A DNA stretch of 64,000 nucleotides from Hypanus sabinus (GCF_030144855.1 NC_082709.1:28644001-28708000); one strand, 5' to 3'; shown: positions 2,470-38,108, counted from the first letter of the stretch. Notes: generated by a model not told the origin, from the letters alone. Numbers and translations: made by a program.

Positions 2470-2590
2470 TTTGAAGAAAATTTACAACTTTGTAATGGAC
2501 CTTTTACGAGGGAGTCGGCGCTCCCATTGGCTAGTTTTGGTCATGTGAATCAAGTAACTGCGTTCATGGCCTTTTCATGATTTCCCTTGT
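2470..2590 (+). promoter_or_regulatory. Orphan Hox-type promoter module (no adjacent Hox ORF)
   Basis: TTTACAAC and TTTTACGA Hox/Cdx-type sites, then ATTGG (2526-2530), 11 nt, CATGTG (2542-2547), the same grammar as the gene promoters here; strong donor CCG|GTAAGT at 2942/2943 downstream. Confidence 0.6.
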
Positions 2591-5138
2591 GAATATTTCA
2601 CTGCATTCCGCTGCTAACTCGTCTCAAACCGTCTTTTCTGTCAGTATCTCCCCTTGACTGCTTTTGTCGTTGGTATTTGGCGCCAGCTGCTTGGGAAAAA
2701 AGGGAGACTTTCCGCTCTATTCGCGGCGTTCAATCCTTTTCTGTATAACTATGAGGAAGTCATTCGACTCATGCTGGGATTTAGCAATCTGATCTCTCTC
2801 ACAGACCTGTGACGTCTGCTTACGGTCTTTCATTTATCCTTCAATTCGCTTTACCTATTATAAGTTATTTTGATAATCGAAACTGTACAAATGGAATACA
2901 AAATCCACCTGGTTCCTAGTCTGGGGCAGCGTCATGAAACCGGTAAGTCTTCTGCTTTCGCTTGACGGTCTGGTGCAGATAGCGGTGTTGTAATGGGAGG
3001 CAACGACGTTGTCTTCGCTGGCTGAGTTCTAGGCAGCTGTTTGGAAGATCGAGGAAAGCTCGACATAAATTAATAAATACAAGACTGATTTTCAAACTGC
3101 GAGTGTCTAATCAGGTCCAGGTGGTCGACTGAGTGGAAACGGTGGCTGTGCGGCAGATTAATTAAATCTTTATTTTCCGCGATGAGGCTGAGAGTTGCGT
3201 TTCTTGCCTAGCTTTCAGATGATACCCTTGCTATTGGACAGCTGACATTTGTGGGGAATGTGCGAATTTCCCCGTTCAATTAAGTGTTATTAGTGTTATT
3301 TGAAAAAAAATACATATTTATTACTTTTATTATTCATGGCTCTATTTGGTTAACTTGCTGGACGACTGTCCAATGAACTGATGCATTGATTGGCGGCTTC
3401 AATATGTTTTTGCTGATCGGTGGTAATCCATGCTATTTTCTACCTTGCAGCCGAGGGTAGGAAGGTTGGTCTATTTTGCTCTGTCAAATAAAAAGTTGGA
3501 GCAATGAGTGATGGGCTTGTGTTAATGATCCTAATAAGTCTGTGCGGCAATCACTGGCTCTAGAAACATCAAGAGCCCTGGGATTGGGGGGGGGGCAAGA
3601 AATGTTTAGCTAACATTTTAATGATATTTTACCACGTGATAGTCGTTTGCGCAAATAAGCAGTGCTCTTACAGTAATTTTCCAGCGGTCAACATCAGACA
3701 TGCTTTCAATATGTTAATGGCGAATAAAGGGACATAGATATTTCTAATATTTTGTGGCTGGGCAAATAACTTCGGTCTGAACATTTGGAGAGTTGTTTTC
3801 TGAATATGATATACCGAGTTGTGATTGTTCACATATTTGTATTGCATACAAAAGCAAGTATCTCTTTATTCTGGGAAATGGTTCAGATTTGATATAAACA
3901 GTTGCAACTTCGTGTTAGCAACTTCATAATAAACACAAGGAGTAAAAAGACATTGAAACCTTTTATTCTGTTCTAATTTTTCAATATTAATTACAAGAGT
4001 CTCCTAAGGAAATATACACAACATAGGGCCATGTTATTATAAGGAAAAATGTAAAGAGAATATTTTATGATTGTTTTTTTCTTAGCCAGGTGTTTGAATT
4101 TCCGCTGATTAAATATTCGGAAACAATTGTTCATCATTTACCTGCAGTTTAAAACTTCTTTCTGAGTCAAAGATGTAGGAACAAGTGTTAAACTGCAGGC
4201 ACTTGGTAGTCAACGTTATTTGAATATAAACTGATCTGTCTTTCAGATTCCAAATTATTTATAGGAACTGAATCTTTTAAAAAGACCAGCTTGATCCATA
4301 TAGCATATAATTATATTGACTATAATTTTCCGTTGGCCATTGATATTGATTATCCAAGGGTTCTTTTAAATTGCAAATTACAATTTTTTAAAAAAACTTT
4401 TCTCCTTTTCTTTCTGTGTCTGTTGGACAGAATTGAAATGAAATTCTGACCACTGGCAATTAGGTCACAATGCATTACTAAAATCAAATGAACGTTTGTG
4501 ACGTTGTGACTATTATTTTATCGCGGCATAAATATTTAAGTATTTTTAATTGTCTACTTCAAGCACATTTGCCTCGGGAAAATTGCTGGTTAAATTATGT
4601 CAGACCGCGACAGTGAAGTGCACCGTACGCATTTTGCTTTATGGAGAAAGCATCTCGATCTTCAGGCAGTTACTGACTTTAATGATTCTCTGCAGTGTGT
4701 TTTCAAGATATCCGCCATCGCTATAATTTGTGGAACAAAGAAAACAATCTTATGCAGCAGTTATTAATTAAGATATTTTATCTCAGTTTAAAAGTGAGCA
4801 TATCAAATATTTGTTAGACTTTTCTCGTTAAACTAAATCTGTTTTGCGTTAAGAATAAGCTGTCAGCTTTTAGATTAGAGTGAATGACTTATTGATTTTC
4901 CTCGTTGCTTTCTTCCTAATGAGACAAAATTAGGAGAACAAAACTCTTGAACAAAAAAAGTAAATCTTCAAAATAAATATAATTAGCAAGTTCGTCTTTC
5001 TAAATCACAATCCCACCTACGATTTTAAGGTAGGACTACTTAATTTATTTTTTCAAGGCACGCCAGCAAAGGTTTCTGTGATATCTAAGTAAATGTGGAT
5101 ATTGTATTGTGTGGCGGGGGTGAGTGAGTGACTGAGAG

Positions 5139-5281
5139 NNNNNNNNNNNNNNNNNNNNNNNNNNNNNNNNNNNNNNNNNNNNNNNNNNNNNNNNNNNNNN
5201 NNNNNNNNNNNNNNNNNNNNNNNNNNNNNNNNNNNNNNNNNNNNNNNNNNNNNNNNNNNNNNNNNNNNNNNNNNNNNNNNN
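5139..5281. other. Assembly gap (143 N)
   Basis: Run of N preceded by GAGT/GA repeat-like sequence, probably a collapsed microsatellite. Confidence 0.95.
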
Positions 5282-8165: not shown

Positions 8166-8269
8166 CAGAGAAATGACATGTGCCTTTTATTTCCATATTT
8201 CATTATATATCGCTCGTTCTGGCGGCGAATAAACGTCTAAGAACCACAAATCAATCCCCTGAAAGGCAG

Positions 8270-8777
8270 ATGAGTTCCTACTTCTTAAACTCTTTCTCAG
8301 GTCGCTACCAAAATGGCCACAATTATCAGTTGCAGAGTTATGGGAATGCCTCGTCTGTGGGCGAGCATTTTAGGGAATCGACGATGCTCTCCGCCAGGTA
8401 TGGCTATGATTACACTGGGATAGACCTCAGCATGACTCGTTCTAACTCAAATCTTCGTGGAGACAGTGAAAGGTCTGCTAACTACATGCAGGCAGCCAGT
8501 AACACCTTTCATAGTTCATCTGGTGCGAGAGCTAAGTCTCCTGATCCTGCGGTCTGCTCAGGGTCTTTAATAAACCCAACTAACAGTACTGTTAAAACGG
8601 GGACTACAGTCACAGGGCCAAGTCATTCATACCGCTGTGGTCAGGACACATCACCGTTAACCGATGAGCATCTTAAGGGAACGAACAGCCCCAAACCAGA
8701 AAGTGGGCAACTAGACAAGGATTCAGCACAGCAGATGCAGATATACCCATGGATGAAAAAACTTCACCTTAACCAAG
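8270..8777 (+). CDS. HOXD5: HoxD5 coding exon 1 (spliced protein 249 aa)
   Basis: Starts [16 protein letters not shown] (Hox5 N-terminus), has [11 protein letters not shown] and hexapeptide [10 protein letters not shown]; ends at phase-1 donor CAAG|GTACGC at 8777/8778. Confidence 0.93.
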
Positions 8778-9134
8778 GTACGCTCAAAGCCGCCATTCTG
8801 CCTTTTCATATGCATTTAAATTTTGATCGAAGTGTTTTTTTAGATTGAGAAACAAAGTAACTTAATAAAAATGAATAAAGAATGATACTTGTAAAAGTCT
8901 TAACAGTTTGAATGAAATCCCAGTGCACGCTGTTGCTTTGACCAGTTACACCAATTGTGTCAAGAACGGCAGCATTTGAGCATCAGCGATTTCCGTTAAA
9001 ATTTAAATAATTTACTTACTCCAATTTACAGATCCTACTAATTTTGTTCTGCACTTATGTGTCTGAAACTGTATAATTTAATATAATTTAGTAATCTAAT
9101 GCGTATAATAATTCGTCTTTAACTTTTTATTAAG

Positions 9135-9376: not shown

Positions 9377-10819
9377 CTGGTTACACCTAACTGGCTATAA
9401 TATTACTGTCCTTTTCGTTGCAATGGAAATGGTTGTTTGGGCACATAAAATACTGAGATACATTAATATCGTGTGGGTTCAAAATCTTGTCATCAATACA
9501 CTTCATCAGTTGTCATCTACAGATGTTAAATTTTTTCTAAATATATATATTTATAATATCTATGCCTAATTCAGATAACAAGAAAGAACAATAAAAAGGT
9601 CAGCCGGCATAAGGCAGCCAAGCAAACCGTTTACCTCCGAGAGCAGAATGAAGTTGTTTTCTGTGTCCGGTTGCTGAACAAACCAATCTTCTACCGGTTG
9701 ATAGCTTCGTTAAAGCTATAATTTGATCATGTTTTGTAAAGTTAGATAAATATTGTTGCTTTCGTCTTTTTTTTACATCAAAGGTGATTTTTTTTAAAAA
9801 ATCAGTGCTGGGAATCGTGGCTGTGATCCCAGGTATATCGTGTGATGTAAATTCTGTACATACATAATGTTTAAATGTCTGACTTTGTGCTAAATAAATG
9901 AAATGAATGGTGTTTTGTCTACAACATTGAAATAAACCCAGTTTTACCAATGAACATTCTCACCTATTGTCTGCAGCTCCTGTCCGTGTACAGAACTCCT
10001 GGCAACAGGCCACTTGTAAAACAACCAAAGTCACCCTCTGAATTTCGCTTCTATTCATTCTACCTAATTCTTATGAAGGTTCTAGAGCTGCGCTCGCCTT
10101 GATTGTTTTCTGTCGCATGTTGTTTATGTCAAGAATTCTTGGTGGAGCTCATACCTATTTGATATTCTGTTTTTTTAAGGGAACATTCCTTCGTTCATAA
10201 ACTTCTGCATCTAGATTCCAGGAAGGTTGATTTCCAAAAAAAAAGTTTGCTAAGTTGTCGTCTAGTGGTGGAACAATATAAGTTGGCTTTCTAATAATTG
10301 GTGGCTATTAGCATTAAATATTCCGAAAATGTATAAAACCTATTGTTGGGACCTAGCTTTGGGGACCAGGGAGTTCTCGATTAGTTTCATTGCACTGAGT
10401 CATTCAGCAGAAGAAACTGTAATGGGGAGTTAAACTCTAAAGCAGGAAGAAATGGTAGATGATTGAAGCAATCGAAATAGGAAACCGATGTCATAGGAAA
10501 CTCTTAATGTCAAAAAGCAATTCTTGTTTGCGTTCCTAATCGGCACAGCTTTATTTCACTGTAGCTCACAAGCTATCGGTCACAGATGCTCACTGTATAT
10601 TTACACTTACCAAATCTAATAGATCGTCGTGGCTGCCTAGGAAATGTCCAAACTGCGCCTTAAAATAAAGAAAACTCATTCTCCAGGGCACTCGTCCTCT
10701 GTGTACTCAGATATATAGCTTTATATTACTGGGAGAGCATTTCAATGAACATGGCTGTCTTTAGTGAAAAGAAGTTTTAAAGTTTAAGGGTTATTTATAT
10801 GGACGCCACAGAGCCAGGT

Positions 10820-10905
10820 CCTGACTGGTTGTACAGGGGCACGTGACGCCATTAAACTTTGTTTTATGGTTAGGGGAGTTGACAAGCCAAAATATAATTC
10901 ACATC
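10820..10905 (+). promoter_or_regulatory. Conserved Hox5-Hox4 element; probable distal promoter for HoxD4/mir-10b transcripts
   Basis: ACTGG-N11-CACGTG then CATTAAA, TTTTATGG (Cdx/Hox) and GGGGAGTTGACA (TALE-type); GTAAGT donors at 11008 and 11053. Confidence 0.7.
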
Positions 10906-13900
10906 ATATATTAGGTTAAGAGCAGACAAGTGCAGATGGTTAGTGTTTTCGAGGTCTGTGGAAAGTGACACCAAGAAGCTGGCTGTCCTGTTTCGCCGTT
11001 ATGCACTGTAAGTGTCCAAGTGGTTTCTACCTTTGCGCTGGAGAAGCAGCAAGTAAGTTCTTTCTAGTCGGTAACAGGGCTGGTGGGCGCGTGACACCTG
11101 ATGTCATTCGAGCCTCTTAGGCGCATGTACTGTTTCTCGGTTAGGCAAAAAATGTAGTCCAACATGCGTTCAGTTCCAACAGCCGTCTGCAATGAAGGCT
11201 GTACGTAATGAATAAGTACGAAATTAATATTGCAGTGAACTAAACAAGATAATATTACGTATGATATTCTATTTTAATTACAGTTATAAATTGAAGAATG
11301 AAGTTTGTCACGATGGCTTAAGCATTCCGTTAAAGAAAAAAACTGAAGCAAACATGAGCATATTATAACCAAATTGGAATAAAATTCTTTACTCAGTTAC
11401 TAATATTTCATGTGCTGAATAACGTTCATTACAATCAGAAAATACTGAGTACTTCCTGATTGTTGTGGGGTTTTTTTAGTGGAACTTGTAGGATATTGAT
11501 ATACAGTACACCGAATACCAAACACTTCCTTTTTATCTGCGAAGCTGTCTAAAATATACCTGGGATATAGGAAATATTTTTAAAAAGCATATCTGTACGT
11601 TATGCAAGCAAATGTCGGTGACCTTTATTGAGACCCATTTTAATCTGCTGGTATTGTTTCACATTGTTAAATAATCTCATTGGTTGTAGATGCCAGGATT
11701 TTATTCACTGTCCCGAGGGTTTTGTAATCGATCACATTCGTTGAAATTTGCATAAGAAGTATAGAACAATGACGAACAAGGTGCTGCTCGTGTATAAAAT
11801 AGTGAGCGGTAACTTTTCACAATTCCCATCCGAAAAGGAACATCCTAATTTTTTAAAGTTGCTATAAGAGCGTTCCCAGCAAATGGAGCAATGTTATCTG
11901 ATTTACTGTTTGCAAAAGTAAATGCACAAACCTCGTGTTCCTGCTTACTGCTACACTTTGACTTTAGAAAGAGAAAGCGGGAACCTTTGCAATCGTACAT
12001 TATATAAATCGGGATCCAGCTCCCCACCCAATACCAAGTCCCCCAGATTCACGCAAGTGAAAGGAGAATAAACACCAAATATCTCTCGAAATTTATATAG
12101 TTCTAAAACCTAAAATGAAAACTGCCCGCATAGAAAACTGAAAAAAAAGTGTTGGGCAGTGGATTAGGTGTTCCAAAAAATAAAATCTGGTCTGTTAGTA
12201 TTCCTTTAACCAGCTTTAGTTTAGTGGTAAATTCTAAAGCTGTGCTTTAATATAAAAAACAACAGAAATAAATATTTTTAAATTCTTAGAGGTTAATGGG
12301 GTAGATAAGCAAAACGCATGAAAGCTTTGTATGCTCCAGATAGTCAACGTCACTTGCACTGACAAAATAGCGATAAGAACACATGAAGAAAATATTTTTA
12401 TGGGTGAATTATAGCGGAAAGATGATGTCATTTATTATCCCATGATCATTAAAAATCGATGCTTTATTTGAATATAGCTTATTTTGAGATAAAAATTAAA
12501 CAATCATCTTCCAATGGAAGAGCGAACAGAAAGGACACACCAAACAATACTAATGATTACAATAATCTCACTGAATCGGTGAAATAATGAGCTTTGTGAA
12601 CTATGCTTTATTTTCTGCTTTCCTTGGAGTTAACTCAAGGAAACAAACTGGCACGATCAGACCAATTAGCAGGACAAAGCATAAATGATCGAATTTCTAT
12701 TTTCAATCTTGTACTTTGTAAACGCGGGTTCGTAATTCCACATATATTGTGATCACAATGACTATTTCTGACTTTGCAAATAAAATATGCACGACGCTGC
12801 GGTGTTTGTAATGCTCCCTAAGATTAGAACATCCACCAGTGCTCATATTTTGCATTGGGTGCTACGTTATTTGATTTACTTAGCTTATGTTGTTTTGTTT
12901 TATTTGCAGACGTGACAGAATGGAGGAAGCAACGCAGTAAGTAGCTAAGAATTATTTCTTATTAATGTAGCGAAAAGCTGGAAACCGTTGGCCGTTTTGG
13001 ATGAAAAGTTTGTGGAGAATATCGCTGTTGTTGCGTTGTTAGCCTAAAAGGACTGGTACCTTGGATTCTGAAATGATTCTCGTAATAATTGTTCTGAACA
13101 GTTACATTCTTTTGTGATATTCTATTTGTGATAACGATGTTTGAGACATCTTGTAATTGCATTTTATTTCCGCGAAAAGGGCGGAATTGTTGTACAGAGC
13201 GCGTTTAAAAGTTGATTATGTTTAAATCTAATTACCTATGACAGTATGGTACCGAAGCAGATTTAGCTGGCTTGTTATTATGAACCGGCACTGCGGCACA
13301 GCGCCTCCCAGTGCAAGGCTGCATTTTTAAAAGGTCATTTGGAGGAAAGTTATTGTTCCGGTTTCAACATCTGCAAAAACGATTTGGCAAATGACGTGGT
13401 AATAATTATAGTAGATGTTTAAAGTTTACCCTTAATAAACTAACAAAGGCGTGTAGGCTAAATCAGATATTAAATATCCCTTGATATCATGGGCATTGTG
13501 TACATGTAGGCCAAACATGAGGCCTTGTGCTTACGAGAATTTTAGATAAAGTATTCGTTTAACGAAACATTTGTACTTCTTTTCTGGAATTATCTCTTCG
13601 CCGGCGTGCCTTTGTAAAATATCGTGGACAGTTTGTACAGGTTACCAGGTCGTTGGGAGAATAGTTATTAATTAACGACTCAGTGTTTATACAATTCTTC
13701 TTTCTAAAATAGGGATGTGAGCCTGTACTTCATATAGTTTGTTAACAAGGAACAGGTCATGGGGATAATTTGACCCGATCATTTTAATATTATTTATTTA
13801 AGTTAAAAATGGGATCACTATTCGTACAACAAAAAAAAAGCCCGAGTGTTTTACTCGTTAAATTAGACAGATTTGGCCCTTATATTGCAAAAGGACATCC

Positions 13901-14632
13901 AGTTGAATTACAATTTGGTCATCACAGAACAATAAGACAAATATTCAAATTCTGTCAGACAATGTATCTTTTCACCTTGGGTTTACTATTGCATCTTCAC
14001 TCGGATAATCATAACTTCTACCAAGAAATCAAATCCAGATTTTACAGAATCTAACTTATCCACATGCGAAAGTTAACACAACCACTCTTCAACTAAAAGC
14101 ATAGTTTAATCACCAGATAAACGTTGAGCAGCGACTCACTTTAAATAGGTCCAAATAATGTTTAACGAGGATTCGCAAAGCAACGGCCCAGCGCCATGGA
14201 TCCATCGTTTCAGCACTAGTTTTGCAACGTGAATCTTTAGGCGTTGATAAATAATCAAGGACAATTGATGCTGAAAAGCAAAACAGTCTTGCTTATGCTG
14301 AACCGGCTTCTGTAAGAAAATGGCTTTCTGGGTCAGTAGAAAGGTGAACTTTTTAAAAATTCAATTTTGTTTTTAAAATCGTTGTACTTATACATAGGAA
14401 AGCTCTTAGCAGGCTGTTGACAATAATAGCTTTCATTGAACCACTGAATCTATAAATAAATATAGGGTTCACTTCCCAAACACTTACTTTGCATTGACAT
14501 TCTCTAGGTCAAAATCTGCTAGATCAAAAGTCGCAGCACTTGTGTGGGCAGTTAAAAAAAGAGGTGAATTTTAATCGGGTTTGTTCATCAATAACTCTTT
14601 GGCATTGACCTGTCTGAACGAGTCAGGCAGTA

Positions 14633-14649
14633 AGGTGAAATGCAGGTCA
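14633..14649 (+). promoter_or_regulatory. DR5 RARE, HoxD4 5' element
   Basis: AGGTGA-aatgc-AGGTCA, matching the recalled mammalian Hoxd4 5' RARE; ~3 kb upstream of the HoxD4 ATG. Confidence 0.88.
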
Positions 14650-16249
14650 CAGCGTCTAACAAATATTAAAATGTGTAGCACCAATCAGCTTCACAAAGTG
14701 CGATAATTTGAACTGTAAAGAGATTTGGCTTTCGAATTATCGGATGATGTAATGATATCTGGTATTTTCTGTGCCAAAAGGCTTTTAAAAGCAGAATTCA
14801 CTGCTGGTGCTTTCGTTGGCGCCATTGGTTGTCGAAAACTGTTAAGCTCTTTTCTTTCCTAATGCACTGGGGTAAATGAAACAAATCACAGGTAAATAAG
14901 ATCAGCGACGTGATTTTTCTTTACAAAGGTAAAATAATTACAGTAATACTGAGATATTAAACAGAACCTGGAGTATTTGTGAAGGAGTTAGGCTCTTCTA
15001 CCATAGAGCGTTGATAAAACGAAAAACCTTTGTTGTGCATAGAAAGAACGGAGAAATACACTAGTGAAGATACAGTTCCCAGTGGGAAAGTTCAGCTTCA
15101 GTAGTACATTGTAATTCCATATATCTCAGGACATTTAAGAGTAACTTTGGTGCTGAAGAACGCACTTATTCATTTTCGTTAGCGTGGTTTTACAATTGTT
15201 CTCGGGCTGACACTTGCGTGCCTAGCTTTTTAACTCGAAAGGGAAGGACAGAATTACCGTCAGTTTAGCTGAGCAGTTGCGTCGAACAGGCTCACTCACA
15301 CACTTTGAAAAGGTCACGCGTTAGGATATAGTTAGAGTGAAAATAATAATGCAACTTTCCGATATGTTTGCAAATGATTTCAGTCTGACCCCGTGCCCTT
15401 CAGCCTATACCACGCAACGTGGTTGCTCTGGAGGCGCAGTGGGGACAGCCAAGAAAGGAACCTGTAAAGAACCAGAGTTTAGAAAACACCTTAGATATAT
15501 TCGAACCAAATGGAATCTGATAAACTGGCAGATCAGATTTTATATTTTTCTCTGTATGTGGTCATCCAATTGCCTTGATTTGTAGCCAGATTTTGAAGCA
15601 TACTGTCGGCATATTTTTTTTTATCCTGCTCCCAGGAAATGAGCGAGATTAAGAATAGAACAAACAATTCTCATTTTGCTGGGATGTTCTCATTTTACCA
15701 CAGTGGCAATGAGTGGCAAACGCTTTGCAGCAAACCAATATTTGTGCTATCACGTTTAAGTTGTATTTGATTAGTTTTAGCGATTGGTTAGACCGAGCTA
15801 TATTTGTTATCAAATCCTGCGGTTTGTTAGTGGTGAGTTCAAATTATTAGCATCTGGAGCAATTATTGATTCACGCTGGGGCACTTAGTTATGTGAGCTG
15901 GAGCGAATCGGTACAAACTGTTTCCTATAAAATCTTTGTGATCTACGAAGGGCTCACAAAACACAGCAACAAATAGTAACTTCTGCCTTGTAAACTGTGT
16001 GCTGGAACTGGTTCAGCACGCTGCTACCGCCGAACAATGCAATACTCATACTTTTTACCAAATTTAAGGGGTTAAATTGTAATATTTTTCAATGGCTAAA
16101 CAACCACATGGTTTAACAAGAACTGCGCCTGATTTTAGTTTCTTATTTATTAATATTACACGTCATTAACTCCTTGGGGATCGCTTTCCACTGCAGTCTT
16201 TTAAACTATTTTACTATTGTGTAATTAGTCACCGAATTTATTTGTAACC

Positions 16250-16331
16250 CGTCGTCTATATATACCCTGTAGAACCGAATTTGTGTGATGTCTCGGTCAC
16301 AGATTCGTTTCTAGGGGAGTATATGGTCGAT
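16250..16331 (+). ncRNA. MIR10B: mir-10b precursor hairpin; mature 5p 16263-16285, 3p arm ~16299-16320
   Basis: Exact miR-10b-5p TACCCTGTAGAACCGAATTTGTG with complementary arm ACAGATTCGTTTCTAGGGGAGT; canonical position between Hox5 and Hox4. Confidence 0.97.
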
Positions 16332-17559
16332 GCCAACACTACGAAAATCAGCAATTTGCACTTCGTGCCTTCTACTTGTCAGACTGATTTAGTTCTAGGG
16401 GATTATTAGAATGATTTGCAATAACCTTTTTTTTTATTTTGAACCCACTCATTAATGTTACTTTTAAATTTCGCCGCTCAGATTTAAATGCTTCTTTCGG
16501 CTACCCCGTACCAAATAAATATAATGCTCAATGCGTTGATTTTTTTTAACCATTATTCAGAAAGCAGTCGATTCTAAACTTCTGGGCTTATTCTCCAGAA
16601 ATACATGATTATTGAAACTTAAGTATTTCTTTCTGAATACTGTCCGTTTCCATGGCGATGGCGATAAATTATCTGAAAAGACTGGCTTACAATTTTGTAC
16701 CGCTTTTGACCAATTTATGGTGTTTCCGAATAACATCGAACCAGATAACGTCTTTGGTTAAAACTTAAAAACAGAATTATACACGTTGCAAATAAAGGTG
16801 TTAGAAATGCGTAACTGTGTTAGTTTTGAAGAGACAATAGGTCATAAGATGTGAGGAGAAGAAGAAAACGAATTTCTCAATATATTAAAGCAAAAACGTT
16901 TGCTAGGGAGCAAGGTCATCAGATACAAAACTAGTTAAAACTTATATTGCACTCTACCAAATTATTGAACTTTCAGAGCGAAGTATTTTGACCTTACAAT
17001 GTCCTTAAGCAACACGTGTAAAGTGTTCTACGTGATACTGAATGTTTTGCTCTGACTTTATCGGGAGTAGACCATGTTTGCCTTTGAATAACTTTGACCA
17101 AAAGACCTTCGTGCATCTGTAATGGCTGTAATTATTTCCCTCAGCTCCGTTATTCCTTTTTTTGGCTAACTGGATGCTTCCTTTGTCACCCTGCGTACGT
17201 TGGATTGCCTGCCGTTTCCTCAAGTACCCTCGCTATTGTCATACTGCTCTCGGGCGAAAACATCAACAAAACATGCGAGCACGCCGAATGCCCGGTCTAT
17301 CCTTGATTTATATGAAAAGCGACAAGGAATGGTCGAAAATTCTCTTTGGACAAAAGAGCAAATTACCTGAGCAATATTCGGGCGCTCAGTGAATGATCAT
17401 TATTCTCTCCAATGGAAACCGCAATTATATGCATTTTCCGGAAACTGTTTCAAATACTTAGTGGCTACTGGAAAAATAATAAAGGCGGTGCAGAATTTAT
17501 TTTATTTTTTAAATCAAGATTTTCTGGACGAAGTTTGTAAAATTTGTCATTAGCTGTTT

Positions 17560-17710
17560 CCTTATCCGGGAATCGGGCCCAGCCCAACCATTGGCTCTCA
17601 CAGTCACATGGGTGACTAACTTTATTCAGTTGACAGCAAGTAGGAGGGCTTTATGGAACGGGAAAAAAGACAACTCGAGAAAAATTAGTATTTTCCACCT
17701 TCAGAAATTA
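17560..17710 (+). promoter_or_regulatory. HoxD4 proximal promoter and 5' UTR block
   Basis: ATTGG(17590-17594)-N10-CACATG(17605-17610), then AACTTTATTCAGTTGACAGCAAGTAGGAGGG and CAGAAATTAATG, typical of Hox4 genes. Confidence 0.8.
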
Positions 17711-18122
17711 ATGACCATGAGTTCGTATTTGATGAACTCTAAATATGTGGATCCCAAATTTCCTCCTTGCGAGGAATACTCGCAAAATAACTACATACCT
17801 GACCACTGCACAGAGTATTACAGCCAGCCGCAGGACACTGATTTTCAGCACCAAGGAGTCTATCCACGGTCAAACTACAGCGGCCAGTCGTACAGCTGCA
17901 GCAACGCTCGGGGCTCTCCAGTGCAGCAGAGGGGTCATGTGCAGGCACAGCCCGCTCCTCAGAACCACCTCACAGGACAGGGGGAGCCCGTTGCACCGCT
18001 CCAAGTGTCCATAGCCCGGCCTTGCAGCCAGCAGCAACACAATACAAAGAATCAAAACGGCACAGCAACCAAACAGCCAGCAGTGGTTTATCCTTGGATG
18101 AAGAAAATCCACGTTAACACGG
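17711..18122 (+). CDS. HOXD4: HoxD4 coding exon 1 (spliced protein 240 aa)
   Basis: [26 protein letters not shown]-terminus and [11 protein letters not shown] hexapeptide; phase-1 donor ACGG|GTAAGG. Confidence 0.96.
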
Positions 18123-18335: not shown

Positions 18336-18538
18336 ACTCGAGTCTGAAAGTAACAGGGACATGTTATATCTCCGTTTCGCCAAGAACTTTAAAGTGATCC
18401 TTAGTAATAATAGATATTTGGACTTTTTAACAGGGGTAGTGTTAGAGGGATGCAATGTGCGTGAGGACTGCTGAATGGAAGCGGCTGACAAACTTTAGGC
18501 TCAGATTTGAATGGTTTTTGAATTGTTTTGTTTTTCAG

Positions 18539-18849
18539 TGAATCCTAGTTACACTGGAGGGGAACCAAAACGTTCACGAACTGCCTATACAAGGCAGCAG
18601 GTTTTAGAACTGGAAAAGGAATTCCATTTTAACAGGTATCTGACAAGACGACGTCGTATTGAAATAGCCCACACTTTATGTCTTTCCGAACGCCAGATCA
18701 AAATTTGGTTTCAGAACCGAAGGATGAAGTGGAAAAAAGACCACAAATTGCCAAACACTAAGACCAGATCGTCTAGTTCTTCTTCTGCTTCCAGCCAACA
18801 GTCACAAACTATTTCCAAGGACCAACAAACAGACCTCACAAGTTTATAG
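18539..18849 (+). CDS. HOXD4: HoxD4 coding exon 2 (homeobox)
   Basis: Acceptor TTTTTCAG|; [34 protein letters not shown]...KDHKLPNTK, ending TDLTSL*. Confidence 0.97.
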
Positions 18850-23379: not shown

Positions 23380-23475
23380 TTATATTTGATTCGGCCACGT
23401 GATTTACTAAATAATTAATGCAGTACGTCCCGAAAGAAACACAGCGTCGTCATTAATCGGCCAAGCAAAGGACTC
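23380..23475 (+). promoter_or_regulatory. Hox4-Hox3 non-coding element; possible distal HoxD3 promoter
   Basis: GGCCACGTGAT E-box, TAAATAATTAATGCAG and GTCGTCATTAATC homeodomain sites; donor TAG|GTAAAC at 23586/23587. Confidence 0.55.
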
Positions 23476-25149
23476 TATCACACTTGAAAAGTGAACAGAT
23501 CCCAAGAATATTATATACAAATGGTCCGCTATCAGACTTTGCTGTTGTAGTTCGTTGCCAGAAACTGAAAAATGGAAGCTTGGTAGGTAAACAATTTTAG
23601 TTTTGTTTCTGGTAAGATAGCAAATGAATGTAACTGTCATATATATTTGATGAATAGCGCCCTTTGCTTCTTACTATGTGCTACCAAGCGACAGTCATAA
23701 GTTGCAGTAGGCTGATATACTGACCTTCTATTCGGATTAGCTTTAACATTTTGGAGCAACTATGATAAACTTCAGGTGCAAAAATTTGTATCTGCTATAT
23801 CTTGGAGGTGGGAGGTAAACATTAGTAAGACTGCGGTGGGATTATTATTAAGGCGTAGTTTTGTGTCCTGAAATGGCGTAGATTTTACGGTTTACTTGTG
23901 CTTTATTGCAAACAATGCCGGCTGTCATGGCATCTGCTGCCTATTTGTACACAACGAAGTAGAGGCCTGAGCTTATATTGAATACCACGAGTCATATATT
24001 TTGTGTTCTTTGAGACGTAATAGAAAGTCTGTAAATGAGATTCAGCGAGAACAATTGCAGGTACTTACGTCAACAGAAAATATATTCATGGGCATTTCGT
24101 GCCTTATATTTTAGTTGATGTGTTGTTATAAAAGATGAAACAAATGTTTCCTTTGAACCTACGAATTTGTTTTTACAGTTAATTGGCATTTATTTCTTAC
24201 AATGGAAGGCAAAACGAGTATTCACAAATTCTTAAGTGTGCGTTAGGCTCATTTTAAGAATAATTGGTAGTGATTGATTCTCTGAATAAGAACAATTATG
24301 AGCACATTTTATAAGGTAATAGATTAACAGAATTCTGATTTTCTGTACCTATATTAGTATGAGAAAGTGCATTAAAGTATGGCTAACGTATATTGTGGAT
24401 GATACAATGCTGTGAAGTACAAGCATGAACTGTTTTTTATTACTGTTTTTTACAGTAACATGCAAAAGTTTTATTACGAGGGTAAAGATTAAAAGTATAT
24501 TGTCAGTAAGCATTTTCAGTTATAATACTGAGCAGAAATGTAAAATCTTTTTGTGAAAAAGGAGAAAGGATTCTACAATCCAAATCATCATAATTGAAGC
24601 AGCAAAGAATGTAATCGTATATATACATCAATAAATATTCTTCAATAACAATAAATTACACTGCAGGCTTTAGTGGCATACCATGACAGCTCCGTTCCTT
24701 CCCCCATCTCTAAAGGTGTAATTAAACTATATAAATTACCGTGGCAAATACAGATGTCTTTGAGAAAGGATTTTATTAAATTGATTGGAGATATTTTACA
24801 ATATGAACCTTCGCATTTATTGCTTCCGTTGCTTTTGTCGTAGCGCTCTTCTGGAAATTGAATTTGCGCTGTCGTCACGTGTGTAAAGTCGACGTTCGTT
24901 TCCTTTTTAAATAAATTATGCATTAAAACAATAACCTATTAATTCAGTTATTCGCCGATGACAAATGCAACGCTGTTTTACTGATGACAAAGTTGCGGTT
25001 GTGAAGCCAAGTTGTTTTTTTTTAACTCTCTTCAACTCTGCATTCTCTACCCTTTAAATTCTGATCCAGCAAAGAATCGGGCAGACAAGAATCAATGAAA
25101 ACGGTTTAATTACAACTTTTTCATTAAATCGAAATAAAGTATTATGGTG

Positions 25150-29480: not shown

Positions 29481-32332
29481 TGGAATTTCTTTGTGCATTT
29501 GATCTGCCACAATTGCTGATTTTTCTTAAATGTATTTCTAAATTAAAGCATGCATTTTAACTCAGTATAATATTCAGTGGTACAATTTCTGCACGACTTC
29601 AGGTCCGGTGCGTGTTCTATCTCCCTCTTTCACGGAAATTTGAAATTTGGAGGCTCCAGGAGAGCTGTGTTATTGCATTTATATGATCTTTTGTATAACC
29701 GAAGTGTTTTTGTTGTTATGAATATGCCCAATCGATATAAAATAATACGTACGTGATGTTTGGTATCCCAATGACAAAGCATAACCGCCTGTCAATATAA
29801 TACATTATACATGAGTTTTATATATGGCGCCAGGCTCTTTCTTGCAATCCTCCATATTTGTATTGTTTTGTGCTTTTATGTAAAAAATGTTCGACAACGG
29901 CGTCAATTTTTCACTAAATACACATATCTAAACATCAACAGGAAAAGAAATATATCTAGGAGGTATATTGATATGGTCAGATTGGGGCTTGGAGATACTA
30001 AATGCAACCCGGTACAAATTCCAGATTTTTATTCAATGCCTTGTTTAGGCCCGGCTTCTATTAAACGACCATTTCAGATGTACCTTTCTGGGAAAGTGCA
30101 GAAATCCACCTTCAGAGCAAACTGCTGATTCGCTAATTGCGAATTTAGATATAAAATCCTTGATGCTATTGATAGATTTTCACGGCAATAACAACTTAAA
30201 TTTCGAAAACCGCTTGACATAAATGATTGGTTATTGCATTAAAATTTTTGTGAAGCTTTATTTGTCAAACAATTCCCCAAAAATTCAAATTCTAATCTTT
30301 ATCATTACTATATCTATTTAACCCGTTCTTTCACTTTAAAAAAGTCACTGACAATGTGACTCCCAGTCATTAATCACACAGCATTGCAATCAGTAACACT
30401 TTGTTTCTAATTTCTGAAGGGAAGGAGATAATACTTAATTTATTTCTGCTTTCATTTAAAGAATAACCAAATGCAATAGGAATTGTATAAAAGGTCACCA
30501 CGAAGCATTGTTTTAAATACTTCTTAATATAAACAATAAAAATATTCTTATTAAAAATGAATCTTCGCCGCCTGATGCTGGTTGTTTTCTTTGATAGGAT
30601 CCGGGAAGGCAGCCTGAAATATATGTGATATACAAAAATATTATTAATGTGTTTGAAACAGAAAATGACATTTTCTTTCAGAACAAAGCCAGCGGCCCCT
30701 GGTCAATACGGACAAATTACACATTCAATCCACAGAAAATCAGATAAAAACAGTGCGTCTGGTGAGTTGTTTGATTTTTCTTTGCTCCCTTTTGCTTAAC
30801 AGCTCTGAATTTCATGCGCCTTGGATTCTGTGTGCAACTGAGATTTGTCAGTGGAGAACTAGTTCGTACTTTTATGTTATGGCCATGAGAAAACAAAGAA
30901 GAAATGAAACATGTTTGAACAGACAGGGACGAGATACTTGGATTCTTTATGTATGGCTCTTCTCGAGATGTCGTCATGTTCTACTTTGAGCTGCAAGCAA
31001 ACTTTTGAAAACTTATCGGTAATTCTAAAGGCTTGGGTTGCATCTGTTAGTACTTCAAAAATATAGATCATATAGACCCACTCTGGAGCATACAGAGTTG
31101 AAAATAAGACAAAGTGAACATTTGTTTAAGCTCACCACTTCACTGTCATTCTTAGTGCACAGAATGAGAATTGTTTATAGTTGTTCTTTAAATCTGCAGT
31201 ATTTATCCAAAATAAAGATTTATGAAGTCTTGGGAAAGTGGTTCGTTCAAACAGTAACGTTATCTCCCTCACGTTACTTTTGTTACATTGTTGCTTAATC
31301 TCTCTCGTTAAATTCAAAATTAAATACGTTTCCATCTACTCTGCTTCTTTTAAATCTTACATCGCTCTTAGTTAAAGGGATCAACACAATTGCTTTGTAC
31401 TAAAGTATATAGTTTATAATTTAATTAAAATACATGGCAGACTCATAAAATCAGCACTTTTTGTAATTTGTATATAAGGGCCGTAAATCTCATGTAATCT
31501 TGGCAGTCTACGTTAAATGTGTTTGCCTACATACTCAAAGTCGTATAAAATAAACTTCCCAAAAATAAGTTGAAAGATGAATCGGGATGCATGTTTCTTT
31601 TGTACAATCTCTCTGGCAGCCTGGGTTGCTGTACCACAGTCGTGGAAAGAGTGCCAAATCATTCCATTTGAAATCCAAGTTTTAAACGTCTCCCGTCCAG
31701 GAACCAGCCGCAGATTTGGAGGGGATTGCGTGATGCTAGCTGAAATATGGGCAGATGTGTCTAGGCAGCCGAATTCCTTGTCAGAAATGATCCGCAAAGT
31801 ATAAACAAGATCAATATCGTTAGATTCCAAAAATAATCCTCAGCAATAGCTGAGGGCAATAAATATTTTCGTAACAAAACATATCACATGATTAAATAAT
31901 TTGTAGTATACGTTACGTTTAAGATTACTGAGCAGATTACATTACACTGAATACACTCGCTAGTTAGTGACTTTAACAAAATAAAAACATAAGCTTTCAA
32001 GTCCCCCTTTTTTGACTCCATACCTGAAATCAAATACTTGATTTCAAATTTGGCTCCCAACTTGCATTTATCAAAAATAATTTTCAGATCCTCCAGCTCG
32101 AGCCATACGATTCTGCTACATGTGAAAAGTTCGCCAGCTAAAACACACTTAAGATTCCTGGACTACTTTCAAAGCCTTATATAAAATCCTACAAGAGCTG
32201 GCGAAACGTAGGTAAAAAAAAACTTGCGGAGTGTGGACATTCTTTTTCGGCTTTCCTCCTCCGCTCTAGCTATTTTACACTTCTGAAGATAGCAGTTCTT
32301 TGGAAAGTGTTTCTTTCCCATTCTGAAGTGAA

Positions 32333-33113: not shown

Positions 33114-35543
33114 CGAGCAGTTGGAGTTTCTGGGCCAGATTTTCAGCTACACTACAGTCTTTTCACATTACCTTAATATTAATGTTAGATTTGATTCTCC
33201 GAAGATAACATTTCCAAATGCACTGCAAACGAGAAAGCTGGTTGTGATGATCAAGTTTCAGAGCCCGCAGCAGTAGATAATTCTGGGTTACTTTCTTATC
33301 TCTCACATAAAATACTGATTAGATGGGGAGACGGGGTGGGGCAAATAGAAATGTAATTAGATTTCAGATAAAAAAAAGTCAAGCAAAGAACAGAAATCTA
33401 ATGCCAATTTTATTAAGCTAAAATGGCGAACATGGTCATGACGGGAAAACTGGGTATAACAAAACACATTAAAATTTAACGAAAATGCCTAGAAACAAGT
33501 AACGGAAGGCTAAAACAACATTGAATTACTTCTTTGAAGGGAACAGCAAAGATGTGCACGTGTGCCGAGCTGCAACTTTGGAGGCCACAGATCATAAACC
33601 TCATATTTCATTTTAATGTCAGGTCTTGTATGGCTGAAGGCTTTTTTTCCAAATGAATAGAAAATCTATTTGTGACGTGATATAGTAGCCAGATAAGCCA
33701 CACGTCCAGTACTTGGGCCAGTTTATTCAAGGATGTTTTATTTAAATGGCTTTGTAGACTAAGTATTATATTTGAAGCTTAAATCCAGGTCAATCATCTT
33801 CGTGTTATGTTTCAAGTTTATGTGTTTTATAACGATTTGTTTCAATGTAACTATTTAATTCTAATCACAACAGTAACCTACTAGTTTAATACATAACTTA
33901 GGGCGATCTAAACGAGAACAAGGCACTTGATTCAATCAAAAAGGTCTGATTTTATTGCTGACCACAACAACCAACCCCCAATCCTCTACCACCACCTCCC
34001 CCCACGCCCCCCACGCCCCCCACCGCCCAGTTCACGCAGACATCGGCCATTTGGGAGGTTTCCTGACTACGTCAGGTTAATTCTGTTTAAAAAAAAGGCT
34101 ATTGCCAAGAGTTTGTGAGAAATTAAATGTAATTATCTTACTAATGCCACTGTAAGTAACTAAAGGACGTTTGTTTGATTGGAACTAGGGTAAATAAAGT
34201 GCATATATATAATTTTTCGTCTGAATTCAGTTGCAATAAAAAAGTCTGTTGATTGAAAAGTTGATGATTAGTTAACGCTAAAAAGTACATCTATTCGCTA
34301 CTTTATGTGTTAGTTTAGCTGGGCTTTGTGTATGTTGAAATAGATTTATTCAGTAATATGTTATTTTGTGGACAATGCCATGATCTAAAGATGCAGTTAA
34401 GTAGCACAAAGCAAATGTGAAATGCTGACTTCGTCATTTCTCTGTTTTTGTTTAGAATAAAGAGTTTGAATAGGTGCTAGTTATACTTTAACTACAATGT
34501 CTATCCCCTGTCATAAAGCAAAACGAGCAACAGAAAGAAACATTCGCTTAAAACAAACCATTCTTACGTTGAAGGAAAAGAAGCCAACAATGGTGAGGGT
34601 ACACTTCGCTGGTTTTTCAGGTTTTGGAACTGGTCCGATCCATCATGTCGAATGTAATAGCGTCCAGATCTCAGAATAAAACAGTCTGTACCCACAGCAA
34701 ATGCTGCAGGCAAATAAGTCGCCTGTGACTGTGGGGATTTTTTTCACTCTTTTTAAGAGGGGTCTTTTTGTTTCTCACCATTACAAAAATGGCCTCAATC
34801 AGTGAAGTCAACTGGAATAGCACTGTGTGTCCCACCGAAATCCACTTAGATCAAGCATGACAGGGACATATCTAGCGTTCTGTAATATCCATTAACTTTG
34901 AGATTATGGTATAGGAAAAAGGCACATTTGGGCTTTTTTTGGTTCTAAATTTTGAGATATATTTCAAATGGTACAACTCATCATTTTTCTTAACATTCCT
35001 TTATATAATGATTTGGTAAATGAATTAAAAGGACAGTTTGTCTGTAGTGAATCTCAGTAAGTGGATAATGCAGTGTAGATTCAAATAATAATAATAAATT
35101 GCCAAAGAAGTGCAATGTAATTGTAATCGTTCATACATCACTTGAACTATGAGCATTTTATACAGCTTGTTCAAATTATCATAGAGAACTGAGTATACAA
35201 ACTGAAGCTAATTGCTTCCAACTGAAGAAGGAGCCAACTCTTAAACTTATTAGAAAATTATAATAGTCTCTCTGAGTTTGTCAACTATTATATTTTATAT
35301 TTCACTTACTTATTTATTGTCTCATAAAAGAATATTTCTCAAACTTGTAAAGGGAAAAAAAAGATCAAGTCTACTAATGACAAGATTGTGAAATATCATT
35401 CATGGGATGAATGTTTTATTTTAGTTTGTAAGCTAAAGCAATTATGGTCCAAACATTTCACTCTATTATGTTTTGTTTTATAACATCTAGGAGCTCTGCA
35501 TTCTGACGATTGTTGTAAACGTGCTGTGTGATCAAAGGTGTCA

Positions 35544-36027
35544 ATGCTATTCGATAAGGGTGTCAAGACCCTGTCATTTCGAAATAGCGAGATGCAAAAA
35601 GCAACTTACTATGACAACTCTGGAATATTTAGTGGTTATTCCTACCAAAAATCCAATACATACAACTACAGCTCAAGTCATCAAGCTTACCCACCATCAT
35701 CGGTTGACAATGATTATCAGAACTCAACGTGCCCAATTCAAACATCTAATGCCAGAGCCCAATCCCATAAGCCCACTGATATAAATGGCAGCTGTATGAG
35801 AACAGGTGGCAGTCAAGGCACTGCCCAACATCCAAGCATCAGTGAGCCACAGCAACCACCTCCTTTGCCACCTTCACCCAATGGAAACAACGCTGCAACT
35901 CAGAAACGAACCAAGTCCATTCCAAATTCTTCCAGCAGCCCGGCTGCCACACTTACCAAGCAAATCTTCCCATGGATGAAAGAATCTCGACAAAATGCTA
36001 AGCAGAAAAACAGCTGCACAGTTGCAG
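35544..36027 (+). CDS. HOXD3: HoxD3 first coding exon (spliced protein 410 aa from ATG 35544; second ATG at 35592)
   Basis: MQKATYYD motif preceded by a 16-aa MLF... extension typical of HoxD3; KQIFPWMKESRQN hexapeptide; exon acceptor TAG|G at 35490/35491; phase-1 donor GCAG|GTATCT. Confidence 0.95.
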
Positions 36028-37359: not shown

Positions 37360-38108
37360 GAGACAATTGTGAGGATAAAAGCCCACCAGGCCCGGCCTCT
37401 AAGAGAGTCCGTACAGCCTATACCAGTGCACAACTGGTTGAACTGGAAAAGGAGTTCCATTTTAATCGTTATCTGTGTCGTCCTCGTCGAGTTGAAATGG
37501 CAAACTTATTAAATCTAACTGAACGGCAAATAAAGATTTGGTTCCAGAACAGAAGAATGAAGTACAAAAAAGACCAAAAGGCAAAAGGGATCATGCACTC
37601 TCCAGTTGGACAGTCTCCAGACAGAAGCCCACTTTTAAATGCTCCAAATAATATTGGATTCTCAAACCAGCTCCCCGCTGTCAACAGTTTGAATTACGAA
37701 GCTCATTCTCCAACATCTTTCACCAAATCTCAGCAGAATATGTATGGCTTGGCTGCTTACACAGCACCTCTTAATAGCTGCCTACCCCAGCAGAAGAGGT
37801 ACCCAGGTACAGAGTTTGAGCATCATACAATGCAGGGAAATGGAGGCTTTGCTAACCATAATTTGCAAGGCAGCCCTGTGTATGTTGGAGGGAACTTTGT
37901 TGATTCAATGCCAGCTTCTGGTCCTATGTTCAACCTTAGTCATCTTCCTCATCCTTCATCAGCCACTGTGGACTATAGTTGTGCTGCACAAATACCAGGC
38001 AGTCACCATCATGGACCATGCGATCCCCATCCCACGTATACAGATCTGACTACTCATCACACAGCTCAGGGAAGAATTCAAGAAGCACCCAAATTAACGC
38101 ATCTGTAA
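37360..38108 (+). CDS. HOXD3: HoxD3 homeobox exon
   Basis: Acceptor TTCTGCAG|; [48 protein letters not shown]...; Hox3 C-terminus [13 protein letters not shown]. Confidence 0.97.

What the first reader, a model, noticed from the sequence alone, without database searches (positions are those of the whole stretch)
12870..12945. 27-nt frame-preserving microexon that would encode a Trp motif ahead of a homeodomain
Seen: long U-rich tract and acceptor TTGTTTTGTTTTATTTGCAG, exon ACGTGACAGAATGGAGGAAGCAACGCA (12910-12936, 27 nt), donor GCA|GTAAGT. Entered in phase 1 it reads (N/D)VTEWRKQR with no stop and exits in phase 1. EWRK resembles the Hox1 hexapeptide FEWMK, and the Trp is the residue that contacts Pbx. 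Chained 11001-11052 + 12910-12936 + 18539-18849 gives one uninterrupted ORF containing the HoxD4 homeodomain. Inference: with the two orphan first exons this could be a modular splicing system that swaps N-termini and cofactor motifs on Hox homeodomains. The simpler reading is a non-coding 5' UTR exon; it also has its own ATG (12920) that could act as a uORF.
Basis: partly seen in the sequence, partly recalled or inferred. Interest (0 to 1): 0.78.

Follow-up and report, generated by a model that had tools for sequence, protein, structure and literature searches.

The report
Conserved 27-base Hox leader microexon
The 27-base unit is a real exon kept for over 400 million years in sharks, rays and chimaeras, but in the RNA available it sits in the untranslated leader of HoxD3 messages, where it supplies an upstream start codon, rather than adding a Trp motif to a Hox protein.

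Summary
Observation confirmed. The window is a stingray HoxD cluster; its HoxD3 protein is identical to that of Hypanus sabinus. The acceptor, the 27-nt exon at 12910-12936 and the GTAAGT donor are as described.

Splice signals alone are at chance level. Conservation is not: ray, sawfish, skate, two sharks and a chimaera all keep YAG|27 nt|GTAAGTA with an invariant ATGGAGGA core.

Little-skate mRNA contigs (5 runs, 2 studies) join the orthologous exon to an 80-nt exon and then to the HoxD3 5'UTR acceptor (ray 30682-30761 and 35491). There it is non-coding:
- The exon's own ATG (12920, strong Kozak context) opens a 45-codon uORF that stops 12 nt before the HoxD3 ATG.
- Leader lengths of 27/80/53 nt are identical in all five species checked.

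This fits the known mouse Hoxd4-P2/Hoxd3 and zebrafish hoxb3a long-range leaders, which host mir-10.

No elasmobranch model or RNA shows this.

The parts
12890..12909 (+). U-rich tract and acceptor (…TTTGCAG) of the microexon
   Evidence: YAG is kept in 6/6 species and alignability to sharks and chimaera begins here.
12910..12936 (+). 27-nt internal leader exon
   Evidence: Exactly 27 nt in six species, with 13/27 columns invariant and core ATGGAGGA. The skate orthologue (L001 5163-5189) is present in HoxD3 mRNA contigs L017, L018, L019, L023 and L024.
12920..12922 (+). Upstream ATG in strong context (purine at -3, G at +4); start of the 45-codon uORF in the HoxD3 leader
   Evidence: Invariant in 6/6 species. 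It is the only ATG in the 160-nt leader in 4 of the 5 species checked.
12937..12943 (+). Donor GTAAGTA
   Evidence: 7/7 columns invariant. One of only three strict conserved donors in 10.4 kb.
2891..2942 (+). 3' end of an upstream first exon (ends CCG|GTAAGT); likely 5' partner of the microexon
   Evidence: Skate contigs L018 and L019 carry CCG directly before the microexon, which does not fit the 11052-type exon (ends CAA). This is a 3-nt match only. ATG 2891 is phase 1 at the donor.
10711..11052 (+). Conserved promoter-like block and alternative first exon with donor CAA|GTAAGT at 11052
   Evidence: 80% invariant columns over 10850-11052, with the donor invariant in six species. The block is also found in gar. 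Its joining to the microexon is inferred, not seen.
16256..16327 (+). mir-10 hairpin, lying in the intron downstream of the microexon
   Evidence: Rfam RF00104, 71.4 bits.
17145..17710 (+). HoxD4 5'UTR part of coding exon 1; its acceptor (CCCTCAG|) is a probable second target of the microexon donor
   Evidence: Four skate HoxD4 contigs start exactly at this acceptor. L009 starts with GAA, the last 3 nt of the skate microexon, followed by this exon. There are 4-7 in-frame stops in six species.
18539..18849 (+).
   Evidence: A junction with a W-containing 27-nt exon is seen only in tetrapod gene models.
30682..30761 (+). 80-nt leader exon joined to the microexon in HoxD3 mRNAs
   Evidence: Skate contigs join the 27-nt exon to skate 23581-23660, the orthologue of this ray exon. 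It is 80 nt with TTTCAG and GTRAGTT in five species.
35491..35543 (+). 53-nt 5'UTR part of HoxD3 coding exon 1; uORF stop TGA at 35529-35531; HoxD3 ATG at 35544

Best explanation
12910-12936 is a genuine, anciently conserved internal leader exon of the long-range HoxD transcription units. These units start upstream of HoxD4 and mir-10; in the ray the first exons end at 2942 and 11052.

Its donor is spliced over HoxD4 to an 80-nt exon (30682-30761) and then to the HoxD3 5'UTR acceptor (35491). It is probably also spliced to the HoxD4 5'UTR acceptor (17145).

In these messages it adds nothing to the Hox protein. Its conserved feature is an AUG in optimal context. In the HoxD3 leader this AUG opens a 45-codon upstream reading frame that ends 12 nt before the HoxD3 AUG.

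Ribosomes scanning from the cap would mostly start there. HoxD3 translation from the long-range, mir-10-hosting transcripts would therefore be damped or made dependent on re-initiation.

**Shown:** exon conservation; inclusion and junctions in skate mRNA; conserved geometry of the upstream frame.

**Inferred:** the same splicing in the stingray, and the effect on translation.
For: **Conservation**
- Six species keep YAG|27 nt|GTAAGTA with core ATGGAGGA.
- Only 3 strict donors are conserved in 10.4 kb, and this is one of them.

**RNA**
- Skate HoxD3 mRNA contigs from 5 runs in 2 studies show the 27-nt exon joined to the 80-nt exon and then to the HoxD3 acceptor. A sixth contig, L022, carries the exon's last 3 nt.
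- HoxD4 contig L009 carries the exon's last 3 nt before the HoxD4 5'UTR acceptor.

**Leader geometry**
- Segments are 27/80/53 nt in ray, sawfish, skate, whale shark and chimaera. The uORF is 45 codons, with TGA 12 nt before the main ATG in the same frame.
- There are no indels in these 160 nt. The HoxD4 5'UTR exon in the six-species alignment of the same locus has 21 gap intervals in 566 nt, which predicts about 6 (rough Poisson P about 0.003).

**Nucleotide-level constraint**
- The codon before TGG is GAA in five species and GTA in one. The amino acid changes but the A of ATG is kept.
- There is no codon periodicity, at 26/23/27 variable sites.

**Literature**
- The mouse Hoxd4 P2 transcript has four non-coding exons with miR-10b in intron 4, and a Hoxd3 mRNA shares that promoter (PMC3185001).
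- Zebrafish hoxb3a splv2 has the same layout around miR-10c (PMC2148072).
Against:
- The skate evidence comes from assembled contigs. These show presence, not proportion, and say nothing about other junctions.
- The upstream partner rests on 3 nt, as does the HoxD4 5'UTR junction.
- The uORF peptide is not conserved and translation was not measured.
- A first-exon ATG (2891 or 11001) would be met first. In the ray it reads the exon in the EWRK frame as a 150-codon frame overlapping the HoxD3 start, so the microexon's ATG need not be the main upstream start.
- Tetrapod gene models use what appears to be the same exon as coding sequence of short HoxD4 isoforms.
- No such exon was found in gar.
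Confidence: 0.7

Rival explanations
1. Dual-use coding microexon. In transcripts that skip HoxD4 exon 1, first exon + 27-nt exon + homeobox exon encode a short HoxD4. Its YPWM hexapeptide is replaced by a W-basic motif that may still engage Pbx.
For: - The ray chain is open and in frame, 129 codons.
- The 27-nt length and phase 1-1 are kept in 6/6 species, and the EWRK frame has no stop in any of them.
- At least 13 tetrapod models of short HoxD4 isoforms have leader + 8 codons with W as the 4th + homeobox exon. Two turtle and two crocodilian models share the 8 codons behind different first exons, which implies a 27-nt exon.
- In frogs the leader is 26 residues with W at residue 22, as in the ray chain.
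- In the chain W lies 14 residues before the homeodomain, against 18 for YPWM.
Against: - No elasmobranch model or contig of this kind appeared in a search where it would have ranked at the top.
- Whale shark and chimaera have 53 nt from ATG to donor, and whale shark has no open phase-1 ATG in that exon.
- Only W and the following K/R are kept. The residue before W runs through E, V, Q, A, T and P, and the last two codons are free.
- Synonymous sites in the core are invariant, which points to RNA-level constraint.
- Gene models pick the longest frame, so only in-frame species are seen.
- Translation and Pbx binding are untested.
Confidence: 0.2
2. Chance pseudo-exon: an AG and a GTAAGT that happen to lie 27 nt apart in a conserved Hox intergenic region, never used.
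For: Equally good signal pairs occur about 14-15 times per strand in the window. The whole region is 79.5% identical between ray and skate.
Against: Skate mRNA contigs contain the exon with exact junctions. The island of conservation starts at the acceptor in sharks and chimaera. The donor is one of three conserved in 10.4 kb.
Confidence: 0.02
3. The leader's fixed length reflects a conserved RNA structure (an IRES- or TIE-like element) rather than a reading frame.
For: Zero indels in 160 nt. Structured elements have been proposed for Hox leaders (PMC8172242, seen).
Against: The consensus fold is no better than column-shuffled alignments (z = 0.09), and single-sequence z-scores run from -1.5 to +0.4.
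Confidence: 0.05

Closest known systems
Mouse Hoxd4 P2 transcript and the long-range Hoxd3 mRNA (NM_010468) that shares its promoter (PMC3185001)
   Same: - Small non-coding exons lie upstream of Hox4.
- miR-10b sits in the intron before the exon that carries the Hox4 ATG.
- The same upstream exons serve both Hoxd4 and Hoxd3.
- The ray layout (first exon, 27-nt exon, mir-10, acceptor 566 nt before the HoxD4 ATG) mirrors this.
   Different: - Sequence orthology of the 27-nt exon to a particular mouse exon was not tested, because no mouse DNA is available in these tools.
- The ray has a second candidate first exon upstream of HoxD5, a gene mammals lack.
- The paper does not describe an upstream reading frame.
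Zebrafish hoxb3a splv2 long-range transcript hosting miR-10c (PMC2148072; Hadrys et al. 2004 and 2006, as cited there)
   Same: It starts 3' of Hox5, has leader exons on both sides of Hox4, ends in the full Hox3 coding sequence, and its primary transcript contains mir-10.
   Different: - It is in a different cluster (HoxB, not HoxD).
- It has one exon upstream of Hox4 and two between Hox4 and Hox3, against two plus one here.
- No homologous 27-nt exon was found upstream of HoxD4 in gar.
Conserved inhibitory uORFs in Hox leaders (PMC8892498) and the Hoxa3/Hoxa11 TIE uORFs (PMC8172242)
   Same: An AUG in the leader of a Hox mRNA, conserved across vertebrate classes, is expected to lower translation of the main frame.
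   Different: - Hoxd3 is not among the 13 genes listed there.
- Those uORFs start in weak context and lie in proximal leaders.
- This one starts in strong context, is assembled from three exons of a distal leader, and is 45 codons long.
Hox hexapeptide (YPWM, or FEWMK in Hox1)
   Same: A Trp followed by basic residues lies a short distance before the homeodomain in the chained frame.
   Different: - There is no aromatic or Pro before the Trp.
- R or K stands where Met is expected.
- Tetrapods have W-K-D.
- Binding is untested, and the exon is untranslated with respect to Hox proteins in the mRNAs actually seen.

Membership tests
Leader exon of long-range Hox3/Hox4 transcripts hosting mir-10 | Lies upstream of Hox4 and mir-10, on the same strand as the Hox genes | tested here: met
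   Exon at 12910-12936, mir-10 at 16256-16327, HoxD4 ATG at 17711, all on +.
Leader exon of long-range Hox3/Hox4 transcripts hosting mir-10 | Included in mature mRNA with exact splice junctions | tested here: met
   Met for the skate orthologue in 5 runs.
Leader exon of long-range Hox3/Hox4 transcripts hosting mir-10 | Spliced across Hox4 into the Hox3 5'UTR | tested here: met
   In skate the 27-nt exon joins the 80-nt exon and then the HoxD3 acceptor. All three pieces and their splice sites are intact in the ray.
Leader exon of long-range Hox3/Hox4 transcripts hosting mir-10 | Contributes no residues to the canonical Hox protein | tested here: met
   For HoxD3, TGA lies 12 nt before the ATG and the other open frame is out of frame. 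For HoxD4, there are 4-7 in-frame stops in the 5'UTR exon.
Leader exon of long-range Hox3/Hox4 transcripts hosting mir-10 | Sequence orthology to a named mouse P2 exon | not testable with these tools
Regulatory uORF | AUG upstream of the main AUG in a mature mRNA, conserved across species | tested here: met
   ATG invariant in 6/6 species and present in skate mRNA contigs.
Regulatory uORF | Conserved frame, length and stop position | tested here: met
   45 codons with TGA 12 nt before the main ATG in 5/5 species. The peptide itself is not conserved.
Regulatory uORF | Ribosome occupancy, or an effect on main-frame translation | not testable with these tools
   No ribosome profiling or reporter data are available.
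Frame-preserving coding microexon | Length 3-27 nt and a multiple of 3 | tested here: met
   27 nt in six species.
Frame-preserving coding microexon | Flanked by coding exons, with the frame kept | tested here: not met
   In skate mRNAs both neighbours are untranslated leader exons. It is met only in tetrapod gene models of short HoxD4.
Frame-preserving coding microexon | Substitutions concentrated at third codon positions | tested here: not met
   Changes fall on positions 1 and 2, the third base before TGG is fixed, and the last two codons are free. Variable sites by position are 26/23/27.
Hox hexapeptide / Pbx-contact motif | [YF]-[PDE]-W-M-[KR] consensus | tested here: not met
   The sequences are T/A/I-E/V-W-R-K/R in cartilaginous fishes and x-Q/A/T/P/V-W-K/R/T-D/N/A in tetrapods. 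Only the W is kept throughout, with a basic residue after it in all but one model. The consensus itself is from my own knowledge.
Hox hexapeptide / Pbx-contact motif | Binds Pbx through the Trp | not testable with these tools

The most novel reading that the evidence does not exclude
The 27-nt exon is a two-purpose module kept in cartilaginous fishes and tetrapods; it was not found in gar.
- Read from its own AUG, it sets a fixed-length 45-codon upstream frame that gates HoxD3 translation from mir-10-hosting long-range transcripts.
- Read one base over, in messages that skip HoxD4 exon 1, the overlapping TGG supplies the Trp of a W-basic motif. That motif replaces YPWM in a short HoxD4 protein.

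The invariant ATGG would then be held by two overlapping constraints.
Probability: 0.15. Interest if true: 0.75.

Novelty: new member of a known kind. Interest (0 to 1): 0.5.

Why it matters
Long-range Hox3/Hox4 transcripts that share leader exons and host mir-10 are known from mouse and zebrafish. Their leader exons have been treated as incidental.

Here, one of them is a 27-nt exon held at fixed length, with fixed splice sites and an invariant AUG, across the chimaera-ray split. The whole 160-nt HoxD3 leader keeps its length and a 45-codon upstream frame. That makes translational control of HoxD3 from the distal promoters a concrete, testable idea.

The tetrapod gene models that use what appears to be the same exon to build short, hexapeptide-less HoxD4 isoforms raise a further question. 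It is not yet known whether these isoforms are real proteins.

For genome annotation, the result explains three 'orphan' features of this window (2470-2942, 11001-11052 and 12910-12936) as parts of a single transcription system.

Tried and rejected
- **Stingray reads.** The look-up of sequencing runs was busy three times and then listed runs, none on record as RNA. No stingray RNA evidence exists in this report.
- **Splice-signal statistics.** These do not separate the unit from chance.
- **Manta/devil-ray locus.** No DNA was served because the file was too large. The Heptranchias HoxD3 protein was not on record.
- **Gar.** The promoter block and mir-10 were found, but no 27-nt unit or ATGGAGGA core lies between them.
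- **Candidate exon 15636-15832.** Its donor is kept in five of six species but its acceptor is not. The block looks more like a CCAAT/TATA promoter. It was not pursued.
- **Rhinoraja HoxD3 isoforms X2-X4.** These differ only by start codon and small acceptor shifts, not by upstream exons.
- **Conserved RNA structure in the leader.** No support.
- **Intron look-alike.** A similar sequence (GAATGGAAGCGG) in the HoxD4 intron near 18470 is kept only in rays, sawfish and skate, so it was judged coincidental.
- **Spliced upstream-frame peptides.** I did not look these up in the contig index.
- **Complex prediction.** Not used, because no Pbx sequence was available.
- **Literature.** A search for a short HOXD4 isoform found nothing relevant.

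Full report
**What the window is.** The + strand carries HoxD5 exon 1 (8180-8848), HoxD4, HoxD3, HoxD2 and HoxD1.
- HoxD4 is 240 aa. Its exons are 17711-18122 and 18539-18849, separated by a phase-1 intron.
- HoxD3 has its ATG at 35544. Exon 1 ends at 36027 and exon 2 starts at 37360.
- mir-10 lies at 16256-16327.

**Observation.** The chain 11001-11052 + 12910-12936 + 18539-18849 is an open 129-codon frame.

The splice signals alone are not special. A rough matrix, with frequencies recalled from memory, gives 14 equally good acceptor-donor pairs on the + strand and 15 on the - strand.

**Conservation.** I fetched the HoxD4 loci of five other species: little skate (L001), elephant shark (L011), sawfish (L012), whale shark (L013) and sevengill shark (L014).
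- Ray and skate align over 11.5 kb at 79.5% identity, so plain similarity proves little.
- All six species have YAG | exactly 27 nt | GTAAGTA, with ATGGAGGA invariant. In sharks and chimaera the alignable island begins at the acceptor.
- In a six-species alignment of 10.4 kb, the only strict GTRAGN donors kept everywhere are ray 11052, 12936 and the known coding donor 18122.
- Invariant columns: 7/60 just upstream, 13/27 in the exon and 7/7 in the donor.

**RNA evidence from skate.**
- *HoxD4 contigs.* Four of the skate HoxD4 mRNA contigs start exactly after CCCTCAG, 568 nt before the ATG. This marks an acceptor that corresponds to ray 17145. One contig (L009) starts with GAA before it, and GAA is the last three bases of the skate microexon.
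- *HoxD3 contigs.* These settle the question. L017, L018, L019, L023 and L024 (five runs, two studies) contain the 27-nt exon joined to an 80-nt exon, then to the HoxD3 5'UTR acceptor. In skate coordinates these are 5163-5189, 23581-23660 and 28582. L022 shows the last three bases.
- *Ray counterparts.* These are 30682-30761 and 35491, with intact splice sites.
- *Upstream partner.* L018 and L019 carry CCG before the microexon. That matches the ray exon ending at 2942 (CCG|GTAAGT), not the 11052 exon, which ends in CAA.
- *Other first exons.* Other contigs use first exons between HoxD4 and HoxD3, orthologous to ray sequence near 23470-23580 and 23990-24060.

The exon's own ATG (12920; A at -3, G at +4) is in frame with the HoxD3 ATG. 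It is separated from it by a conserved TGA at 35529-35531.
- In ray, sawfish, skate, whale shark and chimaera the three leader pieces are 27, 80 and 53 nt.
- In all five, the upstream frame is 45 codons and stops 12 nt before the main ATG.
- The peptide is not conserved. Variable sites by codon position are 26/23/27, and most differences change the amino acid.
- The 160 nt contain no indel. The HoxD4 5'UTR exon in the six-species alignment of the same locus has 21 gap intervals in 566 nt. That predicts about six (my rough Poisson estimate, P about 0.003).
- A conserved RNA fold does not explain the fixed length (z = 0.09).

Through the HoxD4 5'UTR exon, 4-7 in-frame stops precede the ATG in all six species.

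**Against a coding Trp in cartilaginous fishes.**
- The codon before TGG is GAA in five species and GTA in chimaera. The amino acid changes while the A of ATG stays.
- The last two codons are free.
- The ATG of the 11001 exon is 52 nt from its donor in four species but 53 nt in whale shark and chimaera. Whale shark has no open phase-1 ATG in that exon.

A search with the HoxD4 homeobox-exon part found short 'Hox-D4 isoform X2/X3' models in tetrapods. These include emu, eagle, goose, kakapo, zebra finch, two turtles, crocodile, alligator, three frogs and a salamander.
- Each model has a leader, then eight codons with Trp as the fourth (for example STQWKDVN, LTQWKDGY, YTQWRDTW), then the homeobox exon.
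- Two turtle models and two crocodilian models share the eight codons behind different first exons. This implies a 27-nt phase 1-1 exon with TGG at the same place as in the ray.
- In frogs the leader is 26 residues with Trp at residue 22, as in the ray chain.
- No such model or contig appeared for any elasmobranch in the same search, although it would have ranked first.
- These are automatic models that take the longest frame. They show the junction, not the protein.

**Comparison with known systems.**
- The mouse Hoxd4 P2 transcript has four non-coding exons with miR-10b in intron 4. A Hoxd3 mRNA starts at the same promoter (PMC3185001).
- Zebrafish hoxb3a splv2 starts 3' of hoxb5a and contains miR-10c in its primary transcript (PMC2148072).
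- Conserved inhibitory uORFs are described for 13 Hox genes, not including Hoxd3 (PMC8892498).

**Limits.**
- No stingray RNA was examined.
- Places 14627-14677 were kept out of all later searches.
- Contigs show presence only.
- Two junction partners rest on three bases each.
- Tetrapod DNA could not be fetched.

**Verdict.** The unit is a real and ancient leader microexon of a known kind of Hox transcript. Its most likely role is to supply an upstream start codon. The coding Trp reading remains a minority possibility, supported only by tetrapod gene models.

Noticed in passing
window 23418-23635: 218 nt are 99% identical between stingray and little skate, against 79.5% for the region. In skate this stretch holds an alternative HoxD3 first exon (contig L016). 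It is an ultra-conserved promoter or exon block downstream of HoxD4.
   Followed up: partly
window 15735-15832: A conserved block has a CCAAT box, a TATA-like TATATTT and then GTGAGT about 30 nt later. It is kept in six species and lies 420 nt upstream of mir-10. It looks like a proximal promoter for a mir-10/HoxD4 transcript.
   Followed up: partly
L002 start = L001 8637 (ray about 16342): The longest unspliced skate HoxD4 contig begins about 15 nt after the mir-10 hairpin. This recalls the mouse 'P1' RNA, which is a Drosha cleavage product.
   Followed up: no
window 2891-2942 and 11001-11052: Both candidate first exons have an ATG exactly 52 nt before the donor. In the ray each reads through the microexon and leader as a 150-codon frame overlapping the HoxD3 start out of frame. 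Gar has 49 nt (also phase 1); whale shark and chimaera have 53 nt.
   Followed up: partly
window 18465-18490 (HoxD4 intron): The sequence GCTGAATGGAAGCGGCTG resembles the microexon core and would also read AEWKR. It is kept in ray, sawfish and skate only, so it is probably coincidence.
   Followed up: yes
window 35544 vs 35595: HoxD3 is annotated from an upstream ATG (MLFDKG…), 17 codons before the usual MQKATYY start. The uORF stop lies 12 nt before the first and 63 nt before the second, so re-initiation could favour the second.
   Followed up: no
Mobula/Hemitrygon locus: A gene model with metaxin-type domains (Tom37, GST_N_4, GST_C_6) is drawn across the whole HoxD4 neighbourhood in one assembly. 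This is probably a read-through model from Mtx2.
   Followed up: no
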